A program made the position numbers and the translations under genes. A stretch of DNA of 64,000 bases, taken from positions 62,001 through 126,000 of IMG/VR virus record IMGVR_UViG_3300042455_001086; one strand, given 5' to 3'. The notes below the pieces were generated by a model. That model ran no database searches and was not told the DNA's origin. It saw only the letters and a list, made by a program, of their open reading frames with translations. Shown here piece by piece: positions 3,263 to 55,477 of the stretch (position 1 is the first letter of the stretch; each line of letters begins with the position of its first letter).

Positions 3263-3295
3263 ACAAATATAAATATAACGAAATATTTATTTAGT

Positions 3296-3916
3296 ATGAA
3301 AATAATAGTAAAAGAATCTCAATATAGAAAACTAATTCTTGAAGAAAGAAAAATTATGTTTGAAAAAAAGTTAGAAAATATGAAAAACTTCTTTGGGGAA
3401 TTAAGTGAAAACATCAAAAACCAGATTGGTTTGGATTTAACCTTTTTATCTACTTGGGGTGTAACTATTGCCGGATTTGTAAAACCAGTTCAAGATTTTA
3501 TTGCAAATAAATTTGACGGAATATCACCTGACGATTTAGTGTTAATGTCTGTTGGTTTAATTTTGGTATATTATCAAAATAATAAAGAAAAATTAAAAAG
3601 TGTTTTAGACGAAATAAAAGAAAGAAACCTAGTTGAGGTATTTGATGATACATTAAAAGTCGGTGAAAGATTAAGAAATGTGTTCGTTAAATTTATAGAA
3701 AGTTTAGCAATACCTACTTTAAAATATTCTAATATATTGGCATATACTTTTATTATCCCACTAATTGGTGATTTGTTTAATTTAGTCCAAGGTGAATCAG
3801 ATATGGTTAATCCAATTGATGTTGTAAAAAGAATTGGTGGATATATTGTTTTAAATTTGAGTGGTGAAATTGTTAAAAGAATTTTATTTGCTATTGTAAG
3901 GAGATTTAAATCTTAA
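3296..3916 (+). CDS. Leader-bearing hypothetical membrane-associated protein
   Basis: MKIIVKESQY leader; hydrophobic segments; TATTTAT 5 nt before ATG. Confidence 0.7.
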   Translation: MKIIVKESQYRKLILEERKIMFEKKLENMKNFFGELSENIKNQIGLDLTFLSTWGVTIAGFVKPVQDFIANKFDGISPDDLVLMSVGLILVYYQNNKEKLKSVLDEIKERNLVEVFDDTLKVGERLRNVFVKFIESLAIPTLKYSNILAYTFIIPLIGDLFNLVQGESDMVNPIDVVKRIGGYIVLNLSGEIVKRILFAIVRRFKS

Positions 3917-3920
3917 ATCT

Positions 3921-5747
3921 TCATTTTTTTTCTTTTATAATTATTTCCATAACTTTTTTTGTTTCATCGTCTGTTAAGTTATGAATATCTTTATTTTTCT
4001 CAAACCAATTTTTCATAACAGTTATAAATGGCTTTTTTGTCATTTTTGACATTCTTTTAAAACCAAAAATCTGAGCATCAATTTCTTCTGGTTGTGTGTA
4101 ATATTTAAATGAATCTGTTTCTTCTGGTTGATCCAAATCGTAAAGACTATTTAATTTTTGATAAACATGTCTTAATTCGTGTCCAACCAACTCATTTAAT
4201 TCGCCAACAATATCATAAATTAATTTTTGTTTATTTGTTGGGTTATATTTTATTTTAATTGATATTGTATCCTCATCCCTCCAATAGTCAGCATTTAATA
4301 TAAAATCGTCTATTTTTCTATCTTGTTCAATCTCCAATTCAAAACCAATTGGTATTGGTAAATCAGTAAATTCATAGAACATATTATCATCATCCAATTC
4401 TTCTGGTAGATAAAATGTTCCGTCCTCATTTTCTTTGAAAACTTTTACGACATCTCTAACGATTGTTCTAATAATATTTCTTAATTCTGATTTATTTCTT
4501 TCTAAAATAATATCATTTTTAATCTCTTCTATTTCAACAACCAAATCACCATCTCCTTTTATAACTCTATGATACATACCCTTTGGTATGAAGATCGTCT
4601 CACCTTCTTTTAATTGTTTTGGTATTTCATTATCCATTTGAAACTTCCAACCATTCGATTTTATTATTTTTACGTTTCTATCCAATTCATCAAAATGCCA
4701 TTTTAATTCATCACTATTTAAACTCTCCTTGAATAACCTTGTTTTCTTTCCGTTTTCTTTGATCTCGTCAAAAGGTAGAACATCATTTGTATTAACTTTT
4801 TTTTCTGGTAGTGGTGGGTCTAATAAAAATTTCTCGTTTAACCAATGTCTTAATTCATTCTCAACGAAAAATTCTGGAACCTCCTCATCATCTGATTTTT
4901 CTGATGCAATTTCTGCAATATATCTAGCAAACTTAACTTTTAATTTATCATCAAGCATTGTCATAAGTCCATCAGATATAAAAAATATTTTTGATAATGG
5001 GTCGTCAATTCCTAACTCACCCTCAACCAAATTAAAAATTTTCATTATTGTTTTTCCCCACCAAGTTTTATAACCGGTTGTTTCTTCAATTCCAGGTCTA
5101 AACACTTTATTAAACGCTCGTAATAATGATCCGGTAAAACCCACAATTGATAATTGTGGAAAAAACCAAGGAAGTAATCTTAATGTTGCTTTATATCCTC
5201 CTTCACCAATATGTTGATATAATCTTTTTGCTTTTGCGTTTGTTACAATTTCTTTTAACTGACCGAATGTTATTTTTCCTTGAGCTTTACAAAATTTTTT
5301 TGCGTCACAAATATTTTTGATTGCTCTTTCGGATGGTTCAATTTCTTCATTTAAACGATTATCCGTAGTATAGTCTAACTTAAATAATGGTGTTTTATTA
5401 AAATTAATTCTAATATTAAACTTATCTGGATCATATTCTATATACTGACCATCTTGTAATTGTAGAATATTTTCACCTTTTAATAAAATCAAATCTTCAA
5501 TAAAATTAGTTCTTATATTATTTGGTTCAGTATCAATAAAAAAACTAACAGTTGCTTGTGAATTTAAAAGTTCCTCTTTTGGTATGTATTTGTTGACAGA
5601 ACTTTTTGGTGTTATTGCAATACCATATAATTTAAGATTTATTTTTTTCTTATATTTTTCATAAAATAATGGTTCACACGCTTTTTTTAAAAAGGCGTTA
5701 AATAACATTATATATTTTTTATTAATAAATCTTTCGTATGGTGTCAT
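3921..5747 (-). CDS. Multidomain protein: unknown modules + cupin-like domain + HExxH metallopeptidase-like domain
   Basis: LKWHFDE...IFIPKGMYHRVIKG (cupin); GHELRHVYQ...EEIDA (zincin-like). Confidence 0.65.
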   Translation of the reverse strand: MTPYERFINKKYIMLFNAFLKKACEPLFYEKYKKKINLKLYGIAITPKSSVNKYIPKEELLNSQATVSFFIDTEPNNIRTNFIEDLILLKGENILQLQDGQYIEYDPDKFNIRINFNKTPLFKLDYTTDNRLNEEIEPSERAIKNICDAKKFCKAQGKITFGQLKEIVTNAKAKRLYQHIGEGGYKATLRLLPWFFPQLSIVGFTGSLLRAFNKVFRPGIEETTGYKTWWGKTIMKIFNLVEGELGIDDPLSKIFFISDGLMTMLDDKLKVKFARYIAEIASEKSDDEEVPEFFVENELRHWLNEKFLLDPPLPEKKVNTNDVLPFDEIKENGKKTRLFKESLNSDELKWHFDELDRNVKIIKSNGWKFQMDNEIPKQLKEGETIFIPKGMYHRVIKGDGDLVVEIEEIKNDIILERNKSELRNIIRTIVRDVVKVFKENEDGTFYLPEELDDDNMFYEFTDLPIPIGFELEIEQDRKIDDFILNADYWRDEDTISIKIKYNPTNKQKLIYDIVGELNELVGHELRHVYQKLNSLYDLDQPEETDSFKYYTQPEEIDAQIFGFKRMSKMTKKPFITVMKNWFEKNKDIHNLTDDETKKVMEIIIKEKK

Positions 5748-5753
5748 AATTAA

Positions 5754-6368
5754 TTACCAACTTCTTGATGATTTAAGTCCCAATTTTTTTCTATATCTTG
5801 AAACATTACACGCCCAGTAACCAGCTTTTGTTCTATCTTTCTTTTGATCACACTTATGACGAGCTCTAAATGATTTTGCTCTTGATTTACTTGCGTTTCT
5901 AACTCTCAAATTAGGATCACCAAAAGTTACTTTTTTAATATTACCACTTGGTGATTTAACATATACAGCAAATTTCTTTGGTCCTCCTGGTGTCCTAAAA
6001 GGACTATTTAATTTAACATTTTTTCCTCTGTGTTTTGCTTCGGTAATTGGTTCTTCCACCTCAATTGGAGCATCAAGCCAAACTTCCTCACCACTTTCAA
6101 GAATTACCTTTTTACCTAAATCACTTTCAACAATCCAAGTATCTTCTTCATTTAATTGGATTAAACCACGATTATATAATTTTCTTACTTCATTTATTAA
6201 ATTGAAATATTCATCAGAATAAATTCTAAAGATGTTTTCAGATAGTGTAATGTTATTATCCAAATGGTATTTCAAATTTTCAGACACTTTTACATTCTCA
6301 ACTAATCTCATTGAGTGTGAATATATCTCAAGTAATGATTTTCTAATTATATTTTCTAAAATTCTCAT
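5754..6368 (-). CDS. Leader + conserved basic phage domain (DUF6321-like)
   Basis: KLNSPFRTPGGPKKFAVYVK..KKVTFGDP..SFRARHKC..AGYWAC. Confidence 0.65.
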   Translation of the reverse strand: MRILENIIRKSLLEIYSHSMRLVENVKVSENLKYHLDNNITLSENIFRIYSDEYFNLINEVRKLYNRGLIQLNEEDTWIVESDLGKKVILESGEEVWLDAPIEVEEPITEAKHRGKNVKLNSPFRTPGGPKKFAVYVKSPSGNIKKVTFGDPNLRVRNASKSRAKSFRARHKCDQKKDRTKAGYWACNVSRYRKKLGLKSSRSW

Positions 6369-6437
6369 AGTTGTCGATATTTATTTGTATAAATACTTTG
6401 TATCTTAATAAATAAAACATATTTATAGTAAAATACT

Positions 6438-6980: not shown

Positions 6981-7017
6981 AAGTTTGCTTAGGACCATTA
7001 CTGGTTATGGTAATGTT

Positions 7018-7048: not shown

Positions 7049-7078
7049 ATTTATCTAAATATTTATATAAAAACAACT

Positions 7079-7360: not shown

Positions 7361-7388
7361 TAGGTAATTATTACTATATTTGTATCCT

Positions 7389-7544: not shown

Positions 7545-7561
7545 TTAGAGTATTTATTTAT

Positions 7562-10864: not shown

Positions 10865-10906
10865 AATTTTTTATTTTATAAATATCTTTAAAACCAAAAA
10901 AAACCA

Positions 10907-12739: not shown

Positions 12740-12776
12740 ATTTTAATTTTATTTATAAATATCATAAAGAGTTAAA

Positions 12777-12869
12777 AAAAATATTTATATTTGTAGAACA
12801 AATCAAATATCTATGAAGACAATATTTTTTATTTTCACACTTTTTATTGTTAGTTTTGTTAATTCACAA
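12777..12869 (+). repeat. 93-bp direct repeat (promoter + signal-peptide coding), copy 1; copy 2 at 14318-14410
   Basis: Two mismatches by manual alignment. Confidence 0.9.
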
Positions 12870-14282: not shown

Positions 14283-14317
14283 AATATTTTTTACAATAAA
14301 TATTAAAACAATCAAAT

Positions 14318-14410
14318 AAAAATATTTATATTTGTAGAACAAATCAAATATCTATGAAAACAATATTTTTTATTTTCACACTTTTTATTCTTAGTTTTGT
14401 TAATTCACAA
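14318..14410 (+). repeat. 93-bp direct repeat, copy 2
   Basis: Matches 12777-12869. Confidence 0.9.
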
Positions 14411-15303: not shown

Positions 15304-15333
15304 AATTTTTTATTTATAAATATTAGACAAAAT

Positions 15334-17293: not shown

Positions 17294-17311
17294 ATAAATA
17301 AATATAACAAA

Positions 17312-17623: not shown

Positions 17624-17676
17624 ATAAATAAATACATCATAAAATAAAAACCATTACTAAATGAGGTGGGGATAAA

Positions 17677-18146: not shown

Positions 18147-18185
18147 AGTAATAAATACCCGGAATTTCAGAAAAAATTTCAAAAA

Positions 18186-20463: not shown

Positions 20464-20483
20464 ATAAAATAAATATCAAATAG

Positions 20484-22691: not shown

Positions 22692-22694
22692 TTA

Positions 22695-22764
22695 TAATAA
22701 ATATATTGTAATCTTTTTATCTAATCTATAATCTTTAGTAATTCTCTTACTTCTGGGTGTGATA
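22695..22764 (-). repeat. 70-bp exact direct repeat, also at 23408-23477
   Basis: 3' end of gene 23434 plus TATTTAT element, duplicated. Confidence 0.9.
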
Positions 22765-22789
22765 TAATAATTTTCCATATGTTGGAATT

Positions 22790-23404: not shown

Positions 23405-23433
23405 ATGTAATAAATATATTGTAATCTTTTTAT

Positions 23434-23943: not shown

Positions 23944-23979
23944 ATGTAATAAATACCTTATATATACAAAAAACCCCAC
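23902..23979 (-). repeat. 78-bp terminator+promoter+leader unit, also at 26087-26164
   Basis: Three mismatches by manual alignment. Confidence 0.9.
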
Positions 23980-24002
23980 CTTTTGGGGTGGGAATTATCT
24001 GT

Positions 24003-24422: not shown

Positions 24423-24444
24423 ATTATTATAAATATGACCATAA

Positions 24445-24768: not shown

Positions 24769-24796
24769 AGACAAATGTAGTAATTAATTTTGAAAC

Positions 24797-25188: not shown

Positions 25189-25189
25189 A

Positions 25190-26128: not shown

Positions 26129-26185
26129 ATGTTATAAATAGTTTATATATACAAAAAACCCCACTTTTATGTGAGGTTAATAATT

Positions 26186-26473: not shown

Positions 26474-26533
26474 ATACAAAGATATAATTTAATTTTGGAT
26501 TGATCTATAATTGACTTCTGGTTCTGACCTATT

Positions 26534-27467: not shown

Positions 27468-27488
27468 AACTATAAATATGCTTTTATA

Positions 27489-29473: not shown

Positions 29474-29496
29474 AAAAATAAATATCTAATTAAATC

Positions 29497-33479: not shown

Positions 33480-33502
33480 ATTTATATAAATATACTGCTA
33501 AT

Positions 33503-38498: not shown

Positions 38499-38510
38499 AG
38501 TAATAAATAC

Positions 38511-38864: not shown

Positions 38865-38926
38865 AATTATCTGTTTTTTTAAATAAATATAGATTTCATA
38901 ATCTATTTTTGTAGTATTTATATATA

Positions 38927-42781: not shown

Positions 42782-42804
42782 AATACAAAGATAATGAATT
42801 TTGT

Positions 42805-45321: not shown

Positions 45322-45537
45322 TTATTTATTTTTTAATTGACTTATAACTTTATTCATATACCCCTCCAATAAAAAAAGTTTTCTTCTAATACCAATATTA
45401 TCCATATCTGCTAATAACCTCAAATAGTCGTTTAGTTCTTCAAGTTGTGTTTGTGGTTCAACTTCTTTTTGGATTTCAAGGTCCGGAAATGTATTTTTAA
45501 GTGCGTTTTTATGTCTATTTGATAGTTCGTTATTCAT
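45322..45537 (-). CDS. Hypothetical protein
   Basis: 71-aa ORF. Confidence 0.6.
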   Translation of the reverse strand: MNNELSNRHKNALKNTFPDLEIQKEVEPQTQLEELNDYLRLLADMDNIGIRRKLFLLEGYMNKVISQLKNK

Positions 45538-46390: not shown

Positions 46391-46740
46391 TTTATGTTAT
46401 TTTTTAATTTATTTTTTAACCCTTTGAATACCTCTCTACCTTTTTTCAAAGTTTTTATTTTTGGTTGGATTCTTATTGTTTCTTCAAGATTTTCAGTTTC
46501 AATATCCATCCCTTCTATTATTTCAAGTATATTACCTAAATATTTTTTGTGTATGTCAACCCAAGGATATGGTAGTCCCCAATTTTTATGTCCCCAACAA
46601 GATTGTGTGGTTCCAATTTTATGGTAATTTAACAAGACAACCAATTCCCTAACACCATTATCTATTTTGTTTCCCAAGTTATCAGTAATTAATTTTGATT
46701 TTTCATCAATGTTTTTATACCTAATATCTTGTAATTTCAT
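46387..46740 (-). CDS. TYW3-like fold protein
   Basis: IDNGVRELV..LN...TTQSCWGH. Confidence 0.45.
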   Translation of the reverse strand: MKLQDIRYKNIDEKSKLITDNLGNKIDNGVRELVVLLNYHKIGTTQSCWGHKNWGLPYPWVDIHKKYLGNILEIIEGMDIETENLEETIRIQPKIKTLKKGREVFKGLKNKLKNNIK

Positions 46741-46975
46741 AATTTAATCCCCATCTTTCACTTATCTCAGTGAATTTATCGTTTATTTTTTCTTCTTTAA
46801 TACCATTTAAAGATGAGAAATCATTCTCAAATTGTAAACCGTGTTCCCGGTTTGCATCCATAATTTTTTGTTTAAGAACGGAAAGTTCGTTTGAAGTATA
46901 AAATTCTGTTCCGTGATCAATAATTTTTAGTTCCACAAGAATTTTTTTGTCAAAGGTTTTTATTTGGTGTATCAT
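46721..46975 (-). CDS. Hypothetical protein
   Basis: 84-aa ORF. Confidence 0.55.
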   Translation of the reverse strand: MIHQIKTFDKKILVELKIIDHGTEFYTSNELSVLKQKIMDANREHGLQFENDFSSLNGIKEEKINDKFTEISERWGLNYEITRY

Positions 46976-47802
46976 ATAGCTAACTCTAATTTTGAATTTA
47001 TTTTAGTTATACCGTCAATTCCGGTAATCTCAAAATCATCAATTGTGTAGTCGTAGAAGTTTTTATTTTCTTTTAAAATTAACTTTGGTTGTATGTCTAA
47101 TGGTTCCTTGTTTAATAGTTCTGAAACACCATCAAAATGCCTATCGTATATATGTAGGTTCTGAACCAAATGACAAAACTTACCAACTTTATAGTCACAA
47201 TGTCCCGCAACCATCATTAAAAGTGCCGTATATTGAATTTTGTTAATATAACCAGCAACTAAATAGTCGTTGCTACGTTGGATAAGTGTCATATCAAGAG
47301 TTAATTCTCCGTTATTTTTTCTTACCGAGAATAGTATTTCGTATGCGCAAGGAAATAAACCTTTTGTTTCAAATAAATCGTGATACTGAAACATATTGAT
47401 GATATGTCTTCTACCAAACGGATCATCAATTAAACCTACTAATAATCTATCAATTAAATTGTATCTTCCGATTGTTGCACCATATCTCTGTCCGATTGTA
47501 TCATCACCAATATTCCATTCTTCCCACCAGTTAATACCCATCTCACGAGCCACTCTCAATGATGAAGTTTGTTTTTGATATATCCATAAAATTTCTTTAA
47601 TACCTGTTTTAATTGCGGTATTTCTTAATGTTGGGATTGGAAACTCTTCTTTTGATATGTCATACTCTTCAAAAACTCCTGTAATAAATTTTGAGTTTGC
47701 CGGTGTTCCATCCTCGTATTTTGGTCTTGGGTTTTCATCCCAAGAACCTTCTTTTATAATTTTTTGGATGTTTTGGATGTAATATTTATCCGCTTTATTC
47801 AT
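46972..47802 (-). CDS. thyA: Thymidylate synthase
   Basis: ELLWI-like EILWIY, PCAY catalytic Cys, QRSND, NLHIYDRH. Confidence 0.95.
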   Translation of the reverse strand: MNKADKYYIQNIQKIIKEGSWDENPRPKYEDGTPANSKFITGVFEEYDISKEEFPIPTLRNTAIKTGIKEILWIYQKQTSSLRVAREMGINWWEEWNIGDDTIGQRYGATIGRYNLIDRLLVGLIDDPFGRRHIINMFQYHDLFETKGLFPCAYEILFSVRKNNGELTLDMTLIQRSNDYLVAGYINKIQYTALLMMVAGHCDYKVGKFCHLVQNLHIYDRHFDGVSELLNKEPLDIQPKLILKENKNFYDYTIDDFEITGIDGITKINSKLELAI

Positions 47803-48028
47803 TTTCTTTTTTAAAATATTCGTTTATCTGTTCTTCGTGTGGTTTATTTAATTCGTCCAAACAATCAGCAATTAACCTTAAACTATATGGCGACCAATAT
47901 CCTTTTTCTTTATTGGCCTGGTAGTAAAAATACCCATTAATATCTTTAATTGCGTGTCCAATATTTTTGTTCCCATAAAATAATTCAAATAACCCTGGTG
48001 TGAGTTCTTCGGTTGTTATTCTATTCAT
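47795..48028 (-). CDS. Hypothetical protein
   Basis: 77-aa ORF. Confidence 0.6.
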   Translation of the reverse strand: MNRITTEELTPGLFELFYGNKNIGHAIKDINGYFYYQANKEKGYWSPYSLRLIADCLDELNKPHEEQINEYFKKENE

Positions 48029-48524
48029 AACTTTCTATTTTTTTGTCGTTGTATGTTATTGTGATTAGTTTGGTTGGAATATTTTTTTCATCTAAAACTT
48101 TCTTTAATCTATCTGTACCTAAACTCTCCCATTTTACAAATTGAGTATGTTTATCTTTTTCTATTAAATCATATCTCTCTTCCAAATTCAACTCTCGTTC
48201 TTCAATCTTTAATCCCCACCTTTGAGAGAACTCAATATCAGTTTTACATTTTTTGATAAATTCATCTTTTGTTAATTTAATTTTATCCCCCATTATCCAG
48301 TAATAACCCATATAAGCCTCATTCAATAAGTCTGGTTCGTCTTTACCATAATGTTCCAATTGATTTTCGTTGAAGATGTGTAATAATCCGTATTCGTCCA
48401 TTTCACCAATCACTCGGACTTCACCAGCAATTGTTTCAAATACACCAACAATTGTACAAGGAAATTTATAACCTTTTGGTTTGTGAGCCTTGTCCCCCAC
48501 TTTAAATTTTGTTTCTTTATTCAT
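48021..48524 (-). CDS. Two-module hypothetical protein
   Basis: FKVGD..KPKGYKF SH3-like N-terminus. Confidence 0.65.
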   Translation of the reverse strand: MNKETKFKVGDKAHKPKGYKFPCTIVGVFETIAGEVRVIGEMDEYGLLHIFNENQLEHYGKDEPDLLNEAYMGYYWIMGDKIKLTKDEFIKKCKTDIEFSQRWGLKIEERELNLEERYDLIEKDKHTQFVKWESLGTDRLKKVLDEKNIPTKLITITYNDKKIESYE

Positions 48525-48536
48525 ATTTATTTTATT

Positions 48537-48764
48537 TTATTTATATATTGATGATCTTGAATTAAGTCTCTGACTCAATAAAGTTTCCTTGAAGCACTTA
48601 ACAAATTCCTCTTTTATATCTTCAACAACTATTCCATCACCCCACACCATTACGTCTTTCTTAACCCTATCTTTCCAATGATAGTTTGTTGGGTAGTTGT
48701 ATAAAAGGAAGTTCTCCATTTCCTCCATAGTAAAGGAAAGTTCTATTTTAATTTGTTCACTCAT
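48537..48764 (-). CDS. Hypothetical protein
   Basis: 75-aa ORF. Confidence 0.55.
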   Translation of the reverse strand: MSEQIKIELSFTMEEMENFLLYNYPTNYHWKDRVKKDVMVWGDGIVVEDIKEEFVKCFKETLLSQRLNSRSSIYK

Positions 48765-49203
48765 AATCTTTATAATAGTATTTATCTAACAATTCTCTAC
48801 ATTTTTTTGTGACATATTCCAAGGTCCAATTTTGTTTAAAACCATCTCTGAATCCTTCTTCACCTTTTGACATCCATTCGATTGCAAATGCAAAGTTTTC
48901 AAAATCTTTTTCCATCTGGCTTAAGTAAGAATTGGCTTCAAGTAATTCTGTAATATCATAACCATTCTTATGTAACCATAAAACCACTTTGGAATTATCA
49001 AAATGTAATATGCAATTGTCCTGACCATTGTGAAACTCAATACCTATAATTGACCGACCATCAAATGTTATTTGTTGTTTGCCATCTTCAGTGATTACCG
49101 GTTCAAATGATAATTTTTTAAACCAATAATATTTCTCATTTGGATAGACAAATTTTAAAATATCTTTTGCTTCGTCTTCTGTTAGTTCTTTAATGTTTTT
49201 CAT
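48757..49203 (-). CDS. Hypothetical protein
   Basis: 148-aa ORF. Confidence 0.6.
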   Translation of the reverse strand: MKNIKELTEDEAKDILKFVYPNEKYYWFKKLSFEPVITEDGKQQITFDGRSIIGIEFHNGQDNCILHFDNSKVVLWLHKNGYDITELLEANSYLSQMEKDFENFAFAIEWMSKGEEGFRDGFKQNWTLEYVTKKCRELLDKYYYKDYE

Positions 49204-49206
49204 TTC

Positions 49207-49470
49207 TTACCAACTTATTTCCCAATAACCGTCTCTTTGAACATCATACCACCGAACTTTATATCCCAATCTTTCAAGATGAACTCTTGTTGGGTGTGAT
49301 AGTATGTCTTTATAAATTGAGAACTTACCTACTGTTGCCGCTTCCTTAATTTCTTCAATTGTATCCACAATCTCTGGAGTTATTTTAATTTCTTCTGCGA
49401 GCTTTCTTGCTTCTTGTGCGTTCATATCTATTTTATTAAAATTCGTGTTTTCCTGGTTTAATTTTTCCAT
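49207..49470 (-). CDS. Hypothetical protein
   Basis: MNAQEARKL...LERLGYKV. Confidence 0.6.
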   Translation of the reverse strand: MEKLNQENTNFNKIDMNAQEARKLAEEIKITPEIVDTIEEIKEAATVGKFSIYKDILSHPTRVHLERLGYKVRWYDVQRDGYWEISW

Positions 49471-49678
49471 CCAAAATATCTTTCATAACTTTTGGTTGGT
49501 AATCTTCAAGTAATTGTTTTTGTGTTACTTCCCACCCAATTGGTGGTAATGTATAATCTTCAAAATATGTATACCTGATCATTCCTTGAATGTTTTCACC
49601 ACACTCTTTAACTTCTCCGGTTTCGTGGATTGTTGCCTCAAATTTACCTTCTCCAATATGTTTAATTGTGTAACCCAT
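49436..49678 (-). CDS. Hypothetical protein
   Basis: 80-aa ORF. Confidence 0.55.
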   Translation of the reverse strand: MGYTIKHIGEGKFEATIHETGEVKECGENIQGMIRYTYFEDYTLPPIGWEVTQKQLLEDYQPKVMKDILDGKIKPGKHEF

Positions 49679-49680
49679 CT

Positions 49681-49983
49681 TTATTTTCTTTTAAATAATA
49701 TATCAATAATTCTATTAATTGTCCAATCTCTTTTCTTTTCTTTGATGGTTTTTGGTTTCTCTTTGAATGGATTGTGATAGAGATTCGTCTCGGTGTCGTA
49801 GAAATACATAAATGAGCGTAAAAAAACTTGGTGTTGACTTTCTGGAATATTTGTGAAATCGGCAATTATCTTAACAGGTAATTCAGATTTATGCCCAGCA
49901 AGTGTTATACCAGTATTAATTTCAACAATTGGTTTAACATTTATCGTTAAACTATTTTTGGTGTCTAATGTTATATTACTCAT
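49681..49983 (-). CDS. Hypothetical protein
   Basis: 100-aa ORF. Confidence 0.55.
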   Translation of the reverse strand: MSNITLDTKNSLTINVKPIVEINTGITLAGHKSELPVKIIADFTNIPESQHQVFLRSFMYFYDTETNLYHNPFKEKPKTIKEKKRDWTINRIIDILFKRK

Positions 49984-50204
49984 CTTGATATTACTTTACA
50001 ATTATTTACATCTATGTCGTGTGATTTTCCATCAACCTTAACTCTGTAATACATTCCATATAAATTCTGCCATTCTTTAACAACTTCAAATTGTTCTCCG
50101 GTTTTAAATCTTTTTTCAACAAGCCCTGGTCTATAATAATTCAATAGTTCGTGACGATAGTGTTCGCACAAACAATCTTTTTTAACTTCTATTACCATCT
50201 TCAT
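49980..50204 (-). CDS. Small SH3-like hypothetical protein
   Basis: 74-aa ORF. Confidence 0.55.
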   Translation of the reverse strand: MKMVIEVKKDCLCEHYRHELLNYYRPGLVEKRFKTGEQFEVVKEWQNLYGMYYRVKVDGKSHDIDVNNCKVISR

Positions 50205-50219
50205 CTTTGTTTTGTTTTA

Positions 50220-50399
50220 CTATTTAATACCAATTCCCTCTCCGTCAATGTATATTAACTTTACCGTTTCACCATCACCTATAATTGTTAAAGTGGGATA
50301 TTCATCATCTGGAACAGGATAGGTGGGTTTTATTTCATAACGATATTCATAACAAATTTTATCCACTTTATCAAGAAACTCTTTCATTTTATTTGTCAT
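50220..50399 (-). CDS. Small hypothetical protein (59 aa, not in ORF track)
   Basis: Hand translation MTNKMKEFLDKVDKIC...GIK*. Confidence 0.5.
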   Translation of the reverse strand: MTNKMKEFLDKVDKICYEYRYEIKPTYPVPDDEYPTLTIIGDGETVKLIYIDGEGIGIK

Positions 50400-50494
50400 C
50401 TCTTAAATTTTGATTTAATTTTCATCCAAACTATTTCGGGAAAGTTCCATAACCACCAAAAAAATACATAAAATTTTTTCATCAATCAATCATT

Positions 50495-50722
50495 TTATAT
50501 GAAATATTTTGAGTGTATCTCTTGTCTTTTATTTGATAACCGATATTCAAGTGGTGATATGATTGTGGCGTAATTCAATGCCCCTAATTTTCGATCTAAT
50601 TGATTGTAAAAATTTCTAATCAACCTCTTTGCAACAAATGTTTGTTCTCGTGTTTCACAAGAATCAATTACCTTTTCAATCCATTTTGCTACGTCTCCGT
50701 AATGTGTGCTTCTATTTTCCAT
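50495..50722 (-). CDS. KWIEKVIxSCET family protein
   Basis: Paralog of 60106 and 60641; TATATTTG 4 nt before ATG. Confidence 0.7.
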   Translation of the reverse strand: MENRSTHYGDVAKWIEKVIDSCETREQTFVAKRLIRNFYNQLDRKLGALNYATIISPLEYRLSNKRQEIHSKYFI

Positions 50723-50745
50723 AATACAAATATAAAAAAAATTGA

Positions 50746-51003
50746 TTAATTCTCCAAATAAAAATCTTTTCCAGATTTCATTACATATTGAACTGTAACA
50801 CCATCGTTTGTTATTAATTCAATAAACATTGGTTTTCCGGTGTATAAACATAACTCAAATGAATGTGCCGTTGGTTTCATTGACATTATAAGTAATCTCT
50901 CCGGTCCAAGTATTTTAATTGAGGATCCATCAAGTGACAGTTCTTCATTTATGTCAATTTTAACACAATTATCACAAATGGATTCGGCATTTAAATTTTT
51001 CAT
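50746..51003 (-). CDS. Hypothetical protein
   Basis: 85-aa ORF. Confidence 0.55.
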   Translation of the reverse strand: MKNLNAESICDNCVKIDINEELSLDGSSIKILGPERLLIMSMKPTAHSFELCLYTGKPMFIELITNDGVTVQYVMKSGKDFYLEN

Positions 51004-51377
51004 ATATTTTCTTTTTGTTCTACAATCTCAATTAAATTAGTTAGACAATCAAGTTCGGCTTCTTCGTAAGTATAAAATAATTTAGTTGTTGTTGGGTAAT
51101 ACTCTGATCCAATTTCAGATTTAATACTTACCACACCTCGTCTTAAACTTCCACCAAAAGATTCATCTACCCATCCACTTAAACCATGTTTCTCTCTAAA
51201 CCATCTAAATGCTGACTGCCAAGTTGGTGCTGAAATACTTTCAAAATCTCTTTCATCCGAGTTGTAAGTAATACCAAAATTCCATTTACCATCAGCGAAA
51301 TATGACATACATCGTTCATCATAACCCAATGCTTTCATTCTTAAAGCCAAAGGATATATTACAAATTCTTTTTCCAT
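51000..51377 (-). CDS. Conserved hypothetical phage protein
   Basis: SAPTWQSAFRWFREKHGL...YEEAE. Confidence 0.7.
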   Translation of the reverse strand: MEKEFVIYPLALRMKALGYDERCMSYFADGKWNFGITYNSDERDFESISAPTWQSAFRWFREKHGLSGWVDESFGGSLRRGVVSIKSEIGSEYYPTTTKLFYTYEEAELDCLTNLIEIVEQKENI

Positions 51378-51395
51378 AATACAAATATAATAAAA

Positions 51396-52133
51396 TTATT
51401 GTTCCATAGTTGGTTTCAACCACATTAATTTGTTTTCAAAGATATATCTTTTTAATGTTGGGTATTGATCTAATATATCCAGAGTTCTCATCGTGTCGTG
51501 TTTAAAACATTTATATAGTTCTTCCCGGATTCTTTCAGCCGATACAACACTCATTTTACTTTCGTAATCGTAGTTATTAATGTAGTAATCAAGATGTCTT
51601 AAACTAAATCCTTTTGTAATTGAAAACCTAATTGCTCTAATAATTCTTAATGGATCGTCGTCAAAAGTTTCTTTTGTATGTAATGGTGTTTTTAATACCA
51701 TATTTTTTAGATCCTCCATTCCACCAAATAGGTCAATGATGTTTCCATCTATATCTATGGCCATTGCGTTGACCGTGAAATCTCTTCTTGTTAAATCATC
51801 TTCCAATGTTCCAGGTAAAACAATTGGTGTTCTTGTTCCCATTATATAACCAGTTTCCTTTCTTGCCATAACAAAGTCCGCAACTAATCCACTATGAATG
51901 TGGTCTTTTGGAAATTTTGCCCTAATTGTAAAACAATCCGGTGTTACCAAAAAGATTTCAAATCCTTCTTCTTTAAGGAACCCTTCAAGAATATTAAACA
52001 TTGTGTGTGGTGATCCAATATCTTTTAATAGGTCTTCACTTGGTACCACGGTGTAATCAACATCTTTTGATGTCAAACCGAGTATTTCATCTCTGACTTT
52101 GCCACCAACCTCGTAAAATTTAAATAAACTCAT
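51396..52133 (-). CDS. cca: tRNA nucleotidyltransferase (CCA/PAP family, no HD domain)
   Basis: VGGKVRD..KDVD, DDLTRRDFTVNAMA, DDPLRIIRAIRF. Confidence 0.88.
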   Translation of the reverse strand: MSLFKFYEVGGKVRDEILGLTSKDVDYTVVPSEDLLKDIGSPHTMFNILEGFLKEEGFEIFLVTPDCFTIRAKFPKDHIHSGLVADFVMARKETGYIMGTRTPIVLPGTLEDDLTRRDFTVNAMAIDIDGNIIDLFGGMEDLKNMVLKTPLHTKETFDDDPLRIIRAIRFSITKGFSLRHLDYYINNYDYESKMSVVSAERIREELYKCFKHDTMRTLDILDQYPTLKRYIFENKLMWLKPTMEQ

Positions 52134-52134
52134 A

Positions 52135-52665
52135 TTAAATTTTTTTAAGTATCAAACAACCATCTGAATCTAATTTTGGTTGTTCTTTTGGTTTGTCTTC
52201 AGTATACGATGTTGAAAATCCACCTAATGATTGGTCATAGAAACAGGGTTCCATTTTAATTTCAACATCAATTTCTATTTGTTGTTGGATAGATGAGACA
52301 GCCATATCCATTCTGTCTAACTCTGAAATAGTTTTTCTGTCATAATTTGCAAAATTAAATATAGCTTGTTTAACATCTTCCAAAGTAAACACCTTGTCTT
52401 TATTCAGTTCGATTGCTTTGCTGAATCCGTTTTTAAATCCATATTCAGTATCATCTTGTGCTGTTGGATATATTGAATGGTATTTAGCAAAATCATAAGC
52501 CAACTTATCCAAGTCATAACCATTCTTAATGTCGATACAATTTTTAACCGATAATTTATTTGTAATAGCCATTAGAGGACCACCTTCTGTATCTGCAAAT
52601 AACTTACCATCAACTGTAAGCCAATACGTATCCGAATTTAGTGATTTATATAATTTTCCTTTCAT
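52135..52665 (-). CDS. MKGKL family protein
   Basis: Paralog of 52975 and 60877. Confidence 0.7.
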   Translation of the reverse strand: MKGKLYKSLNSDTYWLTVDGKLFADTEGGPLMAITNKLSVKNCIDIKNGYDLDKLAYDFAKYHSIYPTAQDDTEYGFKNGFSKAIELNKDKVFTLEDVKQAIFNFANYDRKTISELDRMDMAVSSIQQQIEIDVEIKMEPCFYDQSLGGFSTSYTEDKPKEQPKLDSDGCLILKKI

Positions 52666-52676
52666 ATCAAATCTTT

Positions 52677-52973
52677 TTAAAGTTGTTTTTTAAAAATTGT
52701 AAACATAATCCCAATACCAATTAACATTCTATCAACAATCATTTGAGTATGACATCCATAGAATGGAATATAAAATTCATTAGGTAATTTCCAAAATATG
52801 AAAGACCCAATTAATAGTAATATATTAAAGAATCCAAATACAATAAAGAGTGGTGCTAAAATGCTTAAAATAGTTTTTCCAAACCATAACCAAGTTTCTT
52901 TATCTGTTTCTTTTAAAGACATAAAAGCTCTTACGGGAGATAAATACAAAACAATATTTAGAAACGTTTTCAT
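52677..52973 (-). CDS. Membrane protein
   Basis: Multiple hydrophobic helices. Confidence 0.65.
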   Translation of the reverse strand: MKTFLNIVLYLSPVRAFMSLKETDKETWLWFGKTILSILAPLFIVFGFFNILLLIGSFIFWKLPNEFYIPFYGCHTQMIVDRMLIGIGIMFTIFKKQL

Positions 52974-52974
52974 A

Positions 52975-53454
52975 TCATATCTTTTTAAGTATTAAACATC
53001 CATTTGGGTCTAAAAACGGAAATGATGTTTCTTCTTTTGGAAAAATTCTTGTAGAATCTAAGCCATCCCAAATATCATCCATCTCAATCTCAACTTCAAT
53101 TTCTGTTGGTTGTAGTATTGGTTGAGTAAATTCCGCAAAAGTACCTTTATTGTATACACAAAAATCCCAAAGATTTCCCATATCCTCCAAAGTAAAAACC
53201 TTGTCTTTATTCAACTCTATTGCTTTTTTGAAACCCTCTTTAAAACCAATATGACCGTAATGTTCATTATAATCACCATTAACATTAGCATACTCATCAG
53301 CCAACTTCTCAACATAAACTACTCCAAATATCTCATCGCAGTTTTGTTTGGATAGTTTTTTACCTTCAGTCACACCATTTGTAATTGCTACTACTTCTCC
53401 ATTTGTGTCTTTAAGTAAATAATCATTCCCTGTTTTAATTAATTTTCCTTTCAT
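52975..53454 (-). CDS. MKGKL family protein
   Basis: Paralog of 52135; TATCTTTG 4 nt before ATG. Confidence 0.7.
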   Translation of the reverse strand: MKGKLIKTGNDYLLKDTNGEVVAITNGVTEGKKLSKQNCDEIFGVVYVEKLADEYANVNGDYNEHYGHIGFKEGFKKAIELNKDKVFTLEDMGNLWDFCVYNKGTFAEFTQPILQPTEIEVEIEMDDIWDGLDSTRIFPKEETSFPFLDPNGCLILKKI

Positions 53455-53479
53455 AGTTCAAAGATACAAAACTTTTTTT

Positions 53480-53512
53480 AAAAAACAAAATCCCACCTAT
53501 AAAGATGGGATT
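53480..53512 (-). terminator. Intrinsic terminator
   Basis: aatccca/tgggatt stem with A-rich plus-strand flank. Confidence 0.7.
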
Positions 53513-53540
53513 AAATATTTTGAAACCTTGTTGTTTTTTA

Positions 53541-54563
53541 TTAGTCAATAACGATTGCTCTTAACGAGTCAGATGTTAATGAATCTGATTTTATGTAAAT
53601 TAATTTATTTTCGTGTCTCTTTAAGAAATTATCCAAAGTATCATTATAGGTTGACATAAGATATTGTTTACCATTAATCATTATATTAGCATCCATCGTA
53701 TAATGAATTTCAGTTTTGGTTCTAACCATTTGATGACCACATTCAGGACAAAATTTCCAAGATGATTTTTTAATCTTTGTTGAACACTTTGGACATCTAT
53801 CAATCAAATCTTTCTTCTCAAATGGTTTTTGAGATTCTGGTAATATCTTCCAAGTTGATGTTGATACGGTCCAAGAATTGAAATTTTTACTTACGGTTTT
53901 AAATGTTTGATTACTTGAAGATCCCATCTCAACTCTTCCTGTTTCAACTGATTTAGATTTTTTTGCAAAACTTCTTGGTTTTTGGTCGTATTTTCTTTCA
54001 AACTTATTTGATCGTGCGTTGTTACTGAAACTTAATTTACCACTATTATTACTAGTAATATCCACATTTGACGAGTAATTAACATTTGAAGTGTATAAAT
54101 TGTTTCCAATTACATCATTAGTTGATGTAAGATGAGTAACACCAAAACCAGCGGTTCCGGTATTAAAGTAAGTTGGATTCCAATTTAAATTATTGTTTAA
54201 TCTTCCAATAATTATATCTTCTTCCTCATAAAACAAAACTTCAACATCTCCGTTGTTTGCAATTGCGTTTTTTGTTTCATTTGAACCATCAACGGTATAA
54301 GTTTCAAACTTAAATTTGTTTGGAACATCAAGGTATCTTTCAAGAAATACTCTTTCACCTGGACGTAAAACAATTCCACCTCCGTTAATAAATTCTCCGT
54401 TTATTGAGATTTTTGATAGAACGGTTTTTTTAGATCCATTATAGAGTTCAATTTCAAATTCTGAACCGTCTTTTAGATAAACATTCTGACCGAATTGTTT
54501 AATCCTTTGTTTGTTTTTTGTGATATAAGCACACGGCTTATCACTGATTTGATTGTAATACAT
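53541..54563 (-). CDS. Conserved jumbo-phage beta-sandwich protein with zinc ribbon
   Basis: VYLKDGSEFEIELYN..ERVFLERY; CPKC..WKFCPECG. Confidence 0.75.
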   Translation of the reverse strand: MYYNQISDKPCAYITKNKQRIKQFGQNVYLKDGSEFEIELYNGSKKTVLSKISINGEFINGGGIVLRPGERVFLERYLDVPNKFKFETYTVDGSNETKNAIANNGDVEVLFYEEEDIIIGRLNNNLNWNPTYFNTGTAGFGVTHLTSTNDVIGNNLYTSNVNYSSNVDITSNNSGKLSFSNNARSNKFERKYDQKPRSFAKKSKSVETGRVEMGSSSNQTFKTVSKNFNSWTVSTSTWKILPESQKPFEKKDLIDRCPKCSTKIKKSSWKFCPECGHQMVRTKTEIHYTMDANIMINGKQYLMSTYNDTLDNFLKRHENKLIYIKSDSLTSDSLRAIVID

Positions 54564-54663
54564 TTTTCCTTATTTTATTTGTTTATTTTATTGGATGCCG
54601 ATTTGTTGGTTTTACCCAACTCAAATGTTTCAAGAACACTCGGAATCCAGTAACAAGGTTTCA
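54564..54663 (-). promoter_or_regulatory. Structured ~100-nt 5' UTR
   Basis: TGGAT/ATCCA and CCGA/TCGG closing two hairpins; 5' 12 nt complementary to 53521-53532. Confidence 0.5.
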
Positions 54664-54716
54664 GGAATAAATATATTATGATTTTGTTTTTTGTAAATAA
54701 AAAGATGGGTTTTAAT

Positions 54717-55085
54717 TTATCTTGCAATTTCCTTTGCTTGTCGTCTTAATTCTTTTGCTTCAGCTTCGAGTTCTCTGGCTCTACCAAGTAATGAATTTAT
54801 TTCTTCGGCGGTTTCCGGTGTCATATACTCAATGTAATCTGCACTATGACGATTGTGCATTCCTGTTAAATATTTTTTCTTTGGGACTTTATCTATTTTA
54901 ACATATTTCCCATCTTTCATCAAATACATAAACTTACCTTGTACTTTATTTCTTAAAATATCGGCAGACCAAGTTCCGGTATCATCAATATCCGATTTTT
55001 TAATGATGTTAAATTTATGATCTTCAACAACACGATTAACAATTCTTGTCAAATCAGATTCGGTAAGTTTTATGATTTTTTTCAT
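54717..55085 (-). CDS. Leader-bearing protein
   Basis: MKKIIKLTESDLTRIV. Confidence 0.75.
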   Translation of the reverse strand: MKKIIKLTESDLTRIVNRVVEDHKFNIIKKSDIDDTGTWSADILRNKVQGKFMYLMKDGKYVKIDKVPKKKYLTGMHNRHSADYIEYMTPETAEEINSLLGRARELEAEAKELRRQAKEIAR

Positions 55086-55094
55086 AACAATAGA

Positions 55095-55466
55095 TTATTT
55101 AATTATTTTTTGTTCCAGAACACCAATCAATTGTTTTGTATATAAATCAATGACATTTTGATATTCAGAAATCAACTTATTTACATTTTCGGTTAGTTTT
55201 ACTAATTTGGAATGTTCGTCATCAGATAAAAAATAAAATGTTGTTTTCGGTAGATCATCTTTTATATTTTTTACCTTAACTATTTTATAATCACCCTTTT
55301 TATTTAAATCTAAATAATATGGTTTATAGCCTTCTGATATGAGTTTTTGATTCCAAGTGTTTGATATTTGTGATCCATATACAATTCTATCACTTTTGGA
55401 TTCTTTTATTATCTTACCAACAATTCTTGTTAAATCCGATTCAGTAAGTTTTATGATTTTTTTCAT
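55095..55466 (-). CDS. Leader-bearing protein
   Basis: MKKIIKLTESDLTRIV; leader DNA near-identical to that of 54717. Confidence 0.75.
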   Translation of the reverse strand: MKKIIKLTESDLTRIVGKIIKESKSDRIVYGSQISNTWNQKLISEGYKPYYLDLNKKGDYKIVKVKNIKDDLPKTTFYFLSDDEHSKLVKLTENVNKLISEYQNVIDLYTKQLIGVLEQKIIK

Positions 55467-55477
55467 AATAATAAATA

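What the first reader, a model, noticed from the sequence alone, without database searches (positions are those of the whole stretch)
3279..55476. Two promoter-like elements sit about 4-6 nt from start codons: widespread leaderless mRNAs with a functional split
Seen: TATTTAT lies 4-6 nt upstream of ATG at 3296, 7562, 17293, 17623, 18146, 20463, 22691, 23404, 23943, 24422, 26128, 27467, 29473, 33479, 38498, 38927 and 55466, mostly leader-peptide genes. TAnnTTTG lies 3-6 nt upstream of ATG at 7389, 24768, 26473, 42781, 50722, 51377 and 53454, all genes without the leader peptide, several with TTTG about 20 nt further up. Established: TTTG-N19-21-TAnnTTTG is the Bacteroidota housekeeping promoter, and T4 late promoters are a single AT-rich -10 box (TATAAATA). 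Inference: Bacteroidota host; early genes use host sigma, late virion cargo uses a phage sigma recognising TATTTAT; transcription starts at or near the AUG.
Basis: partly seen in the sequence, partly recalled or inferred. Interest (0 to 1): 0.65.

Follow-up and report, generated by a model that had tools for sequence, protein, structure and literature searches.

The report
Start-codon-abutting promoters in a Bacteroidota jumbo phage
A 257-kb freshwater phage of Bacteroidota carries two kinds of promoter box, a host-type one on early genes and a phage-type TATTTAT box on late genes. Nearly half of them sit exactly where transcription should start on the AUG itself, so many of its mRNAs probably have no leader.

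Summary
All 24 listed sites are as described. Genome-wide, TATTTAT lies 4-6 nt before 34 start codons, against about 1 in dinucleotide shuffles. TAHHTTTG lies exactly 4 nt before 15 start codons, against 0.2.

The pattern repeats in two related 290-kb phages. It is kept in orthologues at 40-90% protein identity while the spacer letters change.

Both boxes place their TA at -12/-11 relative to the A of ATG. That is the published register of the Bacteroidota -7 element, whose TSS lies 4-5 nt after the G. Leaderless mRNAs are therefore a strong geometric inference, but no RNA data exist for this phage.

- TATTTAT is not confined to 4-6 nt. About 60% of its roughly 100 sites lie further out, with a second mode at 12-16 nt giving A-rich leaders of about 7-11 nt.
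- Only about a third of the leaderless TATTTAT genes carry the N-terminal "leader" helix by my pattern.
- No gp55-like sigma is detectable. The phage encodes a 266-aa paralogue of the Bacteroidota primary sigma, behind a conserved host-type promoter.
- Flavobacterium phage immuto uses the same TATTTATA box on its late genes without any detectable sigma, so what reads the box is open.

The host phylum and the early/late split are supported.

The parts
3263..3295 (.). 33-bp intergenic region between two divergent start codons (ATG at 3262 on the minus strand, ATG at 3296 on the plus strand). It holds two opposed TATTTAT boxes, at 3269-3275 (-) and 3284-3290 (+).
   Evidence: There is no room for a leader plus a separate promoter for either gene.
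7551..7557 (+). TATTTAT box, gap 4 to the ATG at 7562 (sequence TATTTATTTAT)
17298..17304 (-). TATTTAT box, gap 4 to the ATG at 17293 (gene product begins MKIIITESQ)
17628..17634 (-). TATTTAT box, gap 4 to the ATG at 17623
18151..18157 (-). TATTTAT box, gap 4 to the ATG at 18146
20469..20475 (-). TATTTAT box, gap 5 to the ATG at 20463
22697..22703 (-). TATTTAT box, gap 5 to the ATG at 22691 (MNLQE family)
23410..23416 (-). TATTTAT box, gap 5 to the ATG at 23404 (MNLQE family)
23949..23955 (-). TATTTAT box, gap 5 to the ATG at 23943. It lies just downstream of a terminator-like hairpin.
23974..23993 (-). Terminator-like hairpin with T-run, immediately upstream of the 23949-23955 box
24429..24435 (-). 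TATTTAT box, gap 6 to the ATG at 24422
26134..26140 (-). TATTTAT box, gap 5 to the ATG at 26128. It lies downstream of a terminator-like hairpin at 26157-26178.
27472..27478 (-). TATTTAT box, gap 4 to the ATG at 27467
29478..29484 (-). TATTTAT box, gap 4 to the ATG at 29473
33486..33492 (-). TATTTAT box, gap 6 to the ATG at 33479. The gene has the N-terminal helix plus a peptidoglycan-binding domain and a GH19 domain.
38503..38509 (-). TATTTAT box, gap 4 to the ATG at 38498
38915..38921 (+). TATTTAT box, gap 5 to the ATG at 38927
55471..55477 (-). TATTTAT box, gap 4 to the ATG at 55466 (LTESDL family)
10878..10884 (-). TATTTAT box of the short-leader class, gap 13 to the ATG at 10864 with an A-rich leader. 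In-window sites of the same class (gap 12-15): 2015-2021, 12755-12761, 14296-14302, 15316-15322.
7375..7382 (+). Host-type -7 box TATATTTG, gap 6 to the ATG at 7389
24772..24779 (-). Host-type -7 box TACATTTG, gap 3 to the ATG at 24768
26477..26484 (-). Host-type -7 box TATCTTTG, gap 3 to the ATG at 26473
42786..42793 (-). Host-type -7 box TATCTTTG, gap 4 to the ATG at 42781 (metallophosphoesterase)
50727..50734 (-). Host-type -7 box TATATTTG, gap 4 to the ATG at 50722, with TTTG 20 nt upstream
51382..51389 (-). Host-type -7 box TATATTTG, gap 4 to the ATG at 51377
53459..53466 (-). Host-type -7 box TATCTTTG, gap 4 to the ATG at 53454. TTTG lies 19 nt upstream and a hairpin lies before that.
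59679..59686 (-). Host-type -7 box TATCTTTG, gap 4 to the ATG at 59674 (UvrC-like GIY-YIG nuclease).
61349..61356 (-). Host-type -7 box TAATTTTG, gap 4 to the ATG at 61344.

Best explanation
The window is part of a 257-kb freshwater myovirus of a Bacteroidota host, probably Flavobacteriales-like. Its genes are transcribed from two compact promoter classes.

Class H is the ordinary Bacteroidota sigma-A promoter, (TTTG-N19-20-)TAHHTTTG. It drives early, repair and nucleotide-metabolism genes. It also drives an operon that encodes a phage paralogue of the host primary sigma.

Class L is a phage-specific single box, aTATTTAT(a). It has about 100 copies and only a weak T-rich stretch 13-18 nt upstream of it. 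It drives late virion genes and the large family of proteins with an N-terminal amphipathic helix.

In both classes the TA of the box lies at -12/-11 relative to a preferred initiating A. In 57 of 128 promoter-proximal genes (17% of all genes) that A is the A of the ATG, so the mRNA would be leaderless. In most other class L units the A begins an A-rich leader of about 7-11 nt.

Shown: the motifs, their spacing, their conservation, their position at the heads of transcription units, the functional split, and the sigma gene with its host-type promoter.

Inferred: the TSS positions, the early/late timing, and that host core RNA polymerase carrying the phage sigma is what reads TATTTAT. I rate this last point at only about 0.4.
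For: - Enrichment against shuffles: 34 vs 1 for TATTTAT at gap 4-6, and 15 vs 0.2 for TAHHTTTG at gap 4. The same histograms appear in two related genomes, G001 and G002.
- Orthologues at 40-90% identity keep box and spacing while the spacer letters differ. This holds in 15 of 24 class L comparisons, plus 4 more whose box is the overlapping TATTTATTTAT form, and in 8 of 14 class H comparisons.
- Register: the published F. johnsoniae -7 element runs from T-12 to G-5, with 4-5 nt to the TSS (PMC6847099). F. psychrophilum gives -12 to -5 (PMC9723704).
- In the leadered class L sites, the 5th to 7th bases after the box are A in 87-91% of 113 sites (gap 9-18, three genomes). That is exactly where the A of ATG sits in the gap 4-6 class.
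- Motif-bearing genes follow intergenic gaps of 32-71 nt (median). Motif-less genes follow gaps of 3-5 nt.
- Terminator hairpins lie directly upstream of some boxes.
- Two opposed boxes fill a 33-bp divergent intergenic region.
- -33 TTTG/TTG lies at spacer 19-20 in 9-11 of 35 class H sites and almost never at other spacers.
- Function of the genes behind each class.
- The sigma has regions 1.2, 2 and 4. It is 39-48% identical to the 286-290-aa Bacteroidota sigma A and carries its signature motifs. The first gene of its operon keeps TAHHTTTG about 20 nt upstream across 78 related loci.
- No multisubunit or T7-like RNA polymerase was found.
- Host control with the same pipeline: only 5 of 65 TAHHTTTG genes in a Flavobacterium chromosome lie at gap 4-5, against 17 of 35 in the phage (Fisher p = 6e-6).
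Against: - There are no transcript data of any kind. Every public run that holds this DNA is a DNA metagenome.
- Flavobacterium phage immuto has the same TATTTATA box before TerL, portal, sheath, tube, hub and tape-measure genes, but no sigma-70-family or gp55-like ORF was detectable. The phage sigma may therefore not be what reads the box.
- Some class L boxes lie inside the 3' end of the preceding gene, for example before the baseplate wedge gene at genome position 199422. Their conservation there could partly reflect coding constraint.
- Gene starts are my own calls. They are supported by conserved N-termini among paralogues but have not been verified experimentally.
Confidence: 0.62

Rival explanations
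1. TATTTAT is a real late promoter, but the phage sigma-A paralogue does not read it. It is read by an unrecognised late factor shared by flavobacterial T4-like phages (a gp55-like protein too diverged to detect), or by host sigma A redirected by a small phage protein. The sigma-A paralogue would then serve another class, such as middle genes or host-like promoters after host sigma is inactivated.
For: Phage immuto shares the capsid, portal, terminase, sheath, tube and wedge genes and the TATTTATA late box, but has no detectable sigma. T4-type late promoters are likewise a single AT-only 8-mer. The box does not resemble any promoter class described for Flavobacterium (sigma-A variants, sigma-54, SM5, ECF; PMC9723704).
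Against: No gp55, gp33-like or gp45 family match was found in this genome. No candidate emerged among the proteins shared with immuto. The sigma paralogue differs from host sigma A at conserved positions in regions 1.2 and 2.4 and lacks about 21 residues of region 3, as expected for a changed specificity.
Confidence: 0.3
2. The TATTTAT box next to the ATG is a translation signal (an AU-rich enhancer or Kozak-like context for ribosomes that do not use Shine-Dalgarno pairing). The mRNAs would start further upstream and so have leaders.
For: Bacteroidota translation is tuned by upstream A/U-rich context rather than by Shine-Dalgarno pairing (PMC6847099). The box is AT-only.
Against: - The same box occurs at 9-40 nt from other starts, followed by an invariant A-run.
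- It marks the heads of transcription units, not operon-internal genes, which instead have A-rich upstream regions.
- It follows terminators.
- In the 33-bp divergent region there is nowhere else for a promoter.
- The host-type box, whose promoter function is established, shows the same geometry.
Confidence: 0.05
3. The pattern is a by-product of the 30% GC composition or of mis-called start codons.
For: The genome is very AT-rich. AT-only 7-mers are common: TATTTAT occurs 281 times on the two strands.
Against: Dinucleotide shuffles give about 1 site against 34 observed. The reverse complement and other AT 7-mers show no positional peak. Start codons are anchored by N-terminal peptides conserved among paralogues with different upstream regions. 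Orthologues keep the spacing.
Confidence: 0.01

Closest known systems
Bacteroidota primary-sigma (sigma ABfr / sigma A) promoters, -33 TTTG / -7 TAnnTTTG
   Same: Class H boxes match TAHHTTTG, have TTTG/TTG 19-20 nt upstream in about a third of sites, and have AT-rich upstream turns (PMC6847099, PMC7366714).
   Different: About half of the phage's class H boxes sit exactly 4 nt from the ATG, which predicts no leader. In hosts only 3.7% of 5' UTRs are shorter than 10 nt (B. thetaiotaomicron) and 5.5% of mRNAs are leaderless (F. psychrophilum). By my pipeline, 5 of 65 TAHHTTTG genes on a Flavobacterium chromosome lie at gap 4-5.
T4-type late promoters (TATAAATA, read by gp55 with gp33 and the gp45 clamp)
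   Same: A single AT-only box of 7-8 bp with no clear -35 element, on virion genes of a distantly T4-like myovirus (portal, capsid, sheath and wedge homologues).
   Different: The sequence is TATTTAT(A), not TATAAATA, and it is strand-specific. No gp55 or gp45 family match was found. Many boxes abut the start codon.
Leaderless phage and bacterial mRNAs (lambda cI from PRM; middle and late genes of Thermus phage P23-45 with extended -10 promoters; Actinobacteria and Deinococcus)
   Same: A -10-like box a few nucleotides upstream of an AUG that would be the 5' end of the transcript. The AR9 paper remarks that phage transcripts are often leaderless (PMC5312081).
   Different: I found nothing on this for phages of Bacteroidota in the held library. 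Two different promoter classes share the geometry here. The statement that P23-45 middle and late transcripts are leaderless rests on my own knowledge; the paper was not held.
Phage-encoded sigma-70-family factors (such as SPO1 gp28 and gp33/34, and rpoD-like genes of jumbo cyanophages)
   Same: A phage gene with sigma regions 1.2, 2 and 4, expressed from a host-type promoter, which fits a temporal cascade.
   Different: This one is a paralogue of the unusual short Bacteroidota sigma A (39-48% identity) with a shortened region 3. Its target promoter has not been demonstrated.

Membership tests
Bacteroidota sigma-A promoter (class H) | -7 element TAnnTTTG with no G at the two n positions (TAHHTTTG) | tested here: met
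   40 TAnnTTTG sites lie within 40 nt upstream of genes, and 35 of them are TAHHTTTG.
Bacteroidota sigma-A promoter (class H) | -33 TTTG (or TTG) 19-21 nt upstream of the -7 element | tested here: met
   TTTG at spacer 19-20 in 9 of 35 sites and TTG in 11 of 35, with 0-1 at almost every other spacer. The element is also weak in F. johnsoniae.
Bacteroidota sigma-A promoter (class H) | Transcription starts 4-5 nt after the G of the -7 element | not testable with these tools
   No RNA run holds the sequence.
T4-type late promoter system | Consensus TATAAATA at about -10 | tested here: not met
   The enriched box is TATTTAT(A). ATAAATA and TATAAAT show no positional peak.
T4-type late promoter system | gp55-family late sigma and a gp45 clamp | tested here: not met
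   No match to the T4 gp55 protein, phrog_234, phrog_12791 or phrog_223 at E <= 10. A very diverged homologue cannot be excluded.
T4-type late promoter system | Single box with no -35 element | tested here: met
   Only a weak T-rich stretch lies 13-18 nt upstream of the box (53-61% T).
Leaderless mRNA | Promoter -10-type box placed so that +1 falls on the A of an AUG start codon | tested here: met
   The TA of both boxes lies 12/11 nt before the A of ATG at the modal spacing (class L gap 5, class H gap 4).
Leaderless mRNA | Mapped 5' end at, or within 1-2 nt of, the AUG | not testable with these tools
   No RNA data.
Sigma-70 family (the phage sigma, genome 162232-163032, outside the window) | Regions 2 and 4, and region 1.2 as in group 1/2 sigmas | tested here: met
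   Pfam Sigma70_r2 4.9e-17, Sigma70_r4 4.1e-14, Sigma70_r1_2 3.5e-5. RpoD/RpoS-like by NCBIfam, but below every equivalog cut-off.

The most novel reading that the evidence does not exclude
A widespread clade of freshwater Bacteroidota jumbo phages (372 sigma-bearing contigs in IMG/VR) carries a shortened paralogue of the host primary sigma. This sigma redirects host RNA polymerase to a single-box TATTTAT promoter placed so that late mRNAs begin on, or within about 10 nt of, the AUG. Leaderless or near-leaderless translation would then be a main route of phage protein synthesis in a phylum that does not use Shine-Dalgarno pairing, possibly giving phage messages privileged access to ribosomes.
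Probability: 0.3. Interest if true: 0.7.

Novelty: new variant of a known kind. Interest (0 to 1): 0.5.

Why it matters
How Bacteroidota ribosomes choose start codons without Shine-Dalgarno pairing is an open question, and leaderless mRNAs are rare in the hosts studied (about 4-6%). This phage clade would be a natural test case. Nearly half of its promoters abut the start codon, in two promoter classes. It would allow direct tests of leaderless initiation in this phylum.

The work also yields a compact promoter consensus, TATTTAT(A), for late genes of flavobacterial myoviruses. That helps annotation of such phages and helps define their early and late regulons from sequence. It also identifies a sigma-A paralogue whose specificity can be tested.

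Tried and rejected
- Megablast of 12 kb against the phage collection found no match.
- tRNA scan of the window found none.
- The canonical sigma-70 promoter scan was not enriched: 105 found against 113.5 expected.
- T4 gp55 protein, phrog_234, phrog_12791 and the gp45 clamp phrog_223 found nothing in this genome. Pfam Rpb2_6 and Rpb1_2 found nothing. The T7-type RNA polymerase search also found nothing, but its control found nothing either, so that result is uninformative.
- The RNA-run search returned only DNA metagenomes, so read laying was not used, because contigs cannot show transcript ends.
- I looked for a hidden late sigma among proteins shared with phage immuto. PHROGs gave only families of unknown function and a ferredoxin match, nothing related to transcription. 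The Atlas and PDB sequence searches of the 204-aa protein at window 5754-6368 gave nothing. hhalign of 16 shared proteins against a sigma profile and against T4 gp55 gave at best 3.4% probability.
- Two genome-wide hhalign runs timed out and produced no result.
- A third promoter class was not evident in the 55 motif-less genes with long upstream gaps.
- The Berdygulova 2011 paper on P23-45 could not be read.
- Structure prediction, complex prediction and the large protein searches were not used. No candidate justified them.

Full report
**What the window is.** The window is bases 62001-126000 of a 257,166-bp IMG/VR virus record with inverted terminal repeats and 30% GC. It is a myovirus. It has a tail sheath, a portal, a large terminase, family B DNA polymerase, SbcC-like nuclease and baseplate wedge proteins. 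It is only distantly related to isolated phages. The best sheath matches are a Microcystis phage and an uncultured huge phage (about 31% identity), followed by Flavobacterium phage immuto (35% over the C-terminal third) and T4-like phages. Public runs that hold the DNA are lake and freshwater DNA metagenomes from at least 16 studies, and none is RNA.

**Host.** The phage FtsH-like protease is 55-60% identical to its 80 best genome hits, which are Bacteroidota, mostly Flavobacteriales, Sphingobacteriales and Cytophagales; one record is labelled Bifidobacterium. There is no Shine-Dalgarno signal upstream of genes; the region is A-rich, as in Bacteroidota. Canonical TTGACA/TATAAT promoters are not enriched. 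A Bacteroidota host is therefore well supported.

**The observation.** I called 329 genes with a self-trained codon model that takes the first ATG in each ORF and uses no upstream information. TATTTA is the most enriched 6-mer in the 40 nt upstream of genes: 98 genes against 15.8 expected.

- TATTTAT lies 4-6 nt before 34 start codons. Dinucleotide-preserving shuffles of the upstream regions give 0.97 +/- 0.92, with a maximum of 4 in 300 shuffles.
- TAHHTTTG lies exactly 4 nt before 15 start codons, against 0.21 +/- 0.44.
- The reverse complement and other AT-only 7-mers have no such peak.

**Correction on spacing.** The TATTTAT spacing is bimodal. One mode is 4-6 nt. A second is 12-16 nt (22 genes against 1.7 expected), with a tail to about 40 nt. 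About 60% of the roughly 100 gene-proximal boxes are not at the leaderless spacing. The consensus is aTATTTAT(a): A precedes the box in about 70% of sites, and a weak T-rich stretch (53-61% T) lies 13-18 nt upstream of it.

**Why these are promoters.**
- The same box occurs at variable distances from start codons and is strand-specific.
- Motif-bearing genes head transcription units. Their median upstream intergenic distance is 32-71 nt, against 3-5 nt for motif-less genes, in all three genomes examined.
- Some boxes directly follow terminator-like hairpins, for example 23974-23993 and 26157-26178.
- The class H box has TTTG or TTG at a spacer of 19-20 nt in 9-11 of 35 sites and almost never at other spacers. 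That is the published Bacteroidota -33/-7 arrangement (PMC7366714, PMC6847099).
- The two divergent start codons at 3262 and 3296 are separated by only 33 bp, which hold two opposed TATTTAT boxes.

**Why leaderless.** In F. johnsoniae the -7 element runs from T-12 to G-5 and the TSS lies 4 or 5 nt after it (PMC6847099). F. psychrophilum gives the same -12 to -5 position (PMC9723704).

- TAHHTTTG followed by 4 nt and then ATG therefore puts +1 on the A of the ATG.
- TATTTAT at its modal gap of 5 puts its TA in the same -12/-11 register.
- Independent support comes from the leadered class L sites. The 5th to 7th bases after the box are A in 87-91% of 113 sites (gap 9-18, three genomes), against 57-65% at the flanking positions. 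They rise to 60-66% in the 73 sites with longer leaders, from 37-49% just before.
- That A-run sits exactly where the A of ATG sits in the gap 4-6 class. It is the expected signature of a preferred initiating purine.
- The second spacing mode therefore implies leaders of only about 7-11 nt.

None of this is a measured 5' end, so the TSS remains an inference.

**How unusual.** Counting both boxes, with TATTTAA allowed, 57 of 329 genes have the leaderless geometry. That is 17% of all genes and 45% of the 128 promoter-proximal genes. Published figures for hosts are 3.7% of 5' UTRs under 10 nt in B. thetaiotaomicron and 5.5% leaderless in F. psychrophilum. With my own pipeline on 300 kb of a Flavobacterium chromosome, TAHHTTTG precedes 65 of 249 genes with a broad 14-30 nt spacing, and only 5 lie at gap 4-5. 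TATTTAT shows nothing there. Phage against host for class H gives Fisher p = 6e-6.

**Conservation.** The phage sigma gene has 372 relatives in IMG/VR. I fetched two near-complete relatives of 296 and 291 kb, with median orthologue identity of 68% and 61%.

- Both show the same histograms: TATTTAT at gap 4-6 before 40 and 32 genes, against about 1 expected; TAHHTTTG at gap 4 before 6 and 8 genes, against 0.3.
- Among orthologue pairs with aligned N-termini, the class L box and spacing are kept in 15 of 24. Four more were scored as gap 0 only because their box is the overlapping TATTTATTTAT form. The class H box is kept in 8 of 14.
- The 4-6 spacer letters differ between orthologues.
- Around the sigma gene, orthologous upstream regions from 78 loci keep TAHHTTTG, or in other genes TATTTAT, within otherwise diverged sequence.

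**Functional split.**
- Class H gap 3-6 genes with a recognisable domain: M20 peptidase, pyrimidine-dimer glycosylase, metallophosphoesterase, UvrC-like GIY-YIG nuclease, HAD phosphatase, AAA_33 kinase and ribonucleotide reductase. They cluster between about 30 and 150 kb of the genome, where many small ORFs lie.
- Class L genes: two baseplate wedge proteins (gaps 4 and 5), TerL (gap 14), tail sheath (gap 34), a head-tail adaptor, a peptidase and many proteins of unknown function.
- In the window, class L genes include a protein with a peptidoglycan-binding domain plus a GH19 domain.
Of these, 19 have a class L box, 14 have none (they are operon-internal) and none has a class H box out of the 29 class H genes.
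- Its specific link to the leaderless spacing is significant in this genome (13 of 38 against 20 of 291, p = 1e-5). It is weaker in one relative (p = 0.012) and absent in the other.

So the early/late split is supported, but 'mostly leader-peptide genes' is an overstatement.

**What reads TATTTAT.** The genome has one sigma-70-family gene, at genome 162232-163032 on the minus strand, outside the window. It encodes 266 aa with regions 1.2, 2 and 4. It is RpoD/RpoS-like but below every equivalog cut-off.

- It is 39-48% identical to the 286-290-aa primary-sigma-like ORFs of Pedobacter, Aquimarina, Roseivirga and Flavobacterium.
- It shares their VAKQYQNQGL and FISYAVWW motifs.
- It differs at conserved positions in regions 1.2 and 2.4, and lacks about 21 residues of region 3.
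- It lies second in an operon whose first gene keeps a host-type box about 20 nt upstream across the clade.
- No multisubunit or T7-like polymerase, gp55 or gp45 was found.

This fits a cascade in which host sigma A transcribes the phage sigma gene and the phage sigma then directs late TATTTAT transcription.

There is a serious caveat. Flavobacterium phage immuto shares the structural core. It has (C/A)TATTTATA 12-31 nt upstream of TerL, portal, sheath, tube, hub, tape-measure and other late genes. Yet it has no ORF matching a sigma-A profile or T4 gp55. TATTTAT(A) is therefore a late box of a wider group of flavobacterial myoviruses, and its reader may be something both phages share that I could not recognise. 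It does not resemble any described Flavobacterium promoter class.

**Comparison with known systems.** Class H is an ordinary member of the Bacteroidota sigma-A promoter family, apart from its position on the start codon. Class L works like a T4-type late promoter in being a single AT-only box on virion genes. It fails membership on sequence and on gp55 and gp45. Leaderless phage messages are known elsewhere (PMC5312081; lambda cI and Thermus phage P23-45 from my own knowledge). I found no report for Bacteroidota phages in the held library. I rate this a new variant of a known kind, of moderate interest.

**Limits.**
- There are no RNA data.
- Gene calls are my own.
- The relatives are not independent of each other.
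- The sigma-to-box link is an inference.
- No other genetic code was needed or used.
- Nothing in the window resembled human sequence.

Noticed in passing
window 1-40000, and elsewhere in the genome (for example ATGs at 17293, 22691, 33479, 55085, 55466): At least 33 proteins begin with a conserved amphipathic N-terminal helix, in three flavours: MKKIIRLTESDL.RIVKRV, MKIIITESQ and MNLQESIRRILREE. It is attached to unrelated C-terminal parts, one of them a peptidoglycan-binding plus GH19 domain. This looks like a shared targeting or packaging tag, and it never occurs behind a host-type promoter.
   Followed up: partly
NC_055915.1 (loci L240-L243), for example upstream of genes at 119017, 120621, 147026 and 149201: The isolated Flavobacterium phage immuto has the same (C/A)TATTTATA box 12-31 nt upstream of its late structural genes. 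No sigma-70-family or gp55-like ORF is detectable, and TAHHTTTG is not clearly enriched.
   Followed up: partly
genome 162232-163032 (L009:12232-13032, minus strand), outside the window: A 266-aa phage paralogue of the Bacteroidota primary sigma with a shortened region 3. It has 372 relatives in IMG/VR at 80% identity or more among the best 80.
   Followed up: yes
window 12785-12800 and 14326-14341 (upstream of the ATGs at 12813 and 14354): Overlapping boxes, TATTTATATTTG, which is TATTTAT fused to TATATTTG. They lie before two paralogous genes for proteins with signal-peptide-like N-termini (MKTIFFIFTLF). These may be dual early-and-late promoters.
   Followed up: no
genome 14400-18422, 19487-22492 and 205008-207092 (L003, L004, L012): The portal (1340 aa, with an HNH endonuclease segment at residues 115-371), TerL (1001 aa) and a DNA methyltransferase (694 aa) all carry large inserted segments, the last two matching phrog_36001. 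These may be inteins or homing-endonuclease insertions.
   Followed up: no
genome about 45450-61070 (L006:454-16069), just upstream of the window: A cluster of 24 tRNA genes on the minus strand, one with an odd 4-base anticodon call.
   Followed up: partly
genome 33325-35574 (L005:3325-5574, plus strand): An FtsH-like ATP-dependent protease, 55-60% identical to Bacteroidota chromosomal genes. It is a probable host-derived auxiliary gene.
   Followed up: partly
genome 18423-18450 (upstream of the portal gene): The T4 late consensus TATAAATA occurs once, 12 nt upstream of the portal ATG. It is a single case and may be chance.
   Followed up: no
window 22691-26180: Near-identical promoter regions are duplicated along with paralogous MNLQE genes. 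The regions upstream of 22691 and 23404 match each other, and the terminator-promoter modules upstream of 23943 and 26128 match each other. This indicates recent tandem duplication of whole transcription units.
   Followed up: no
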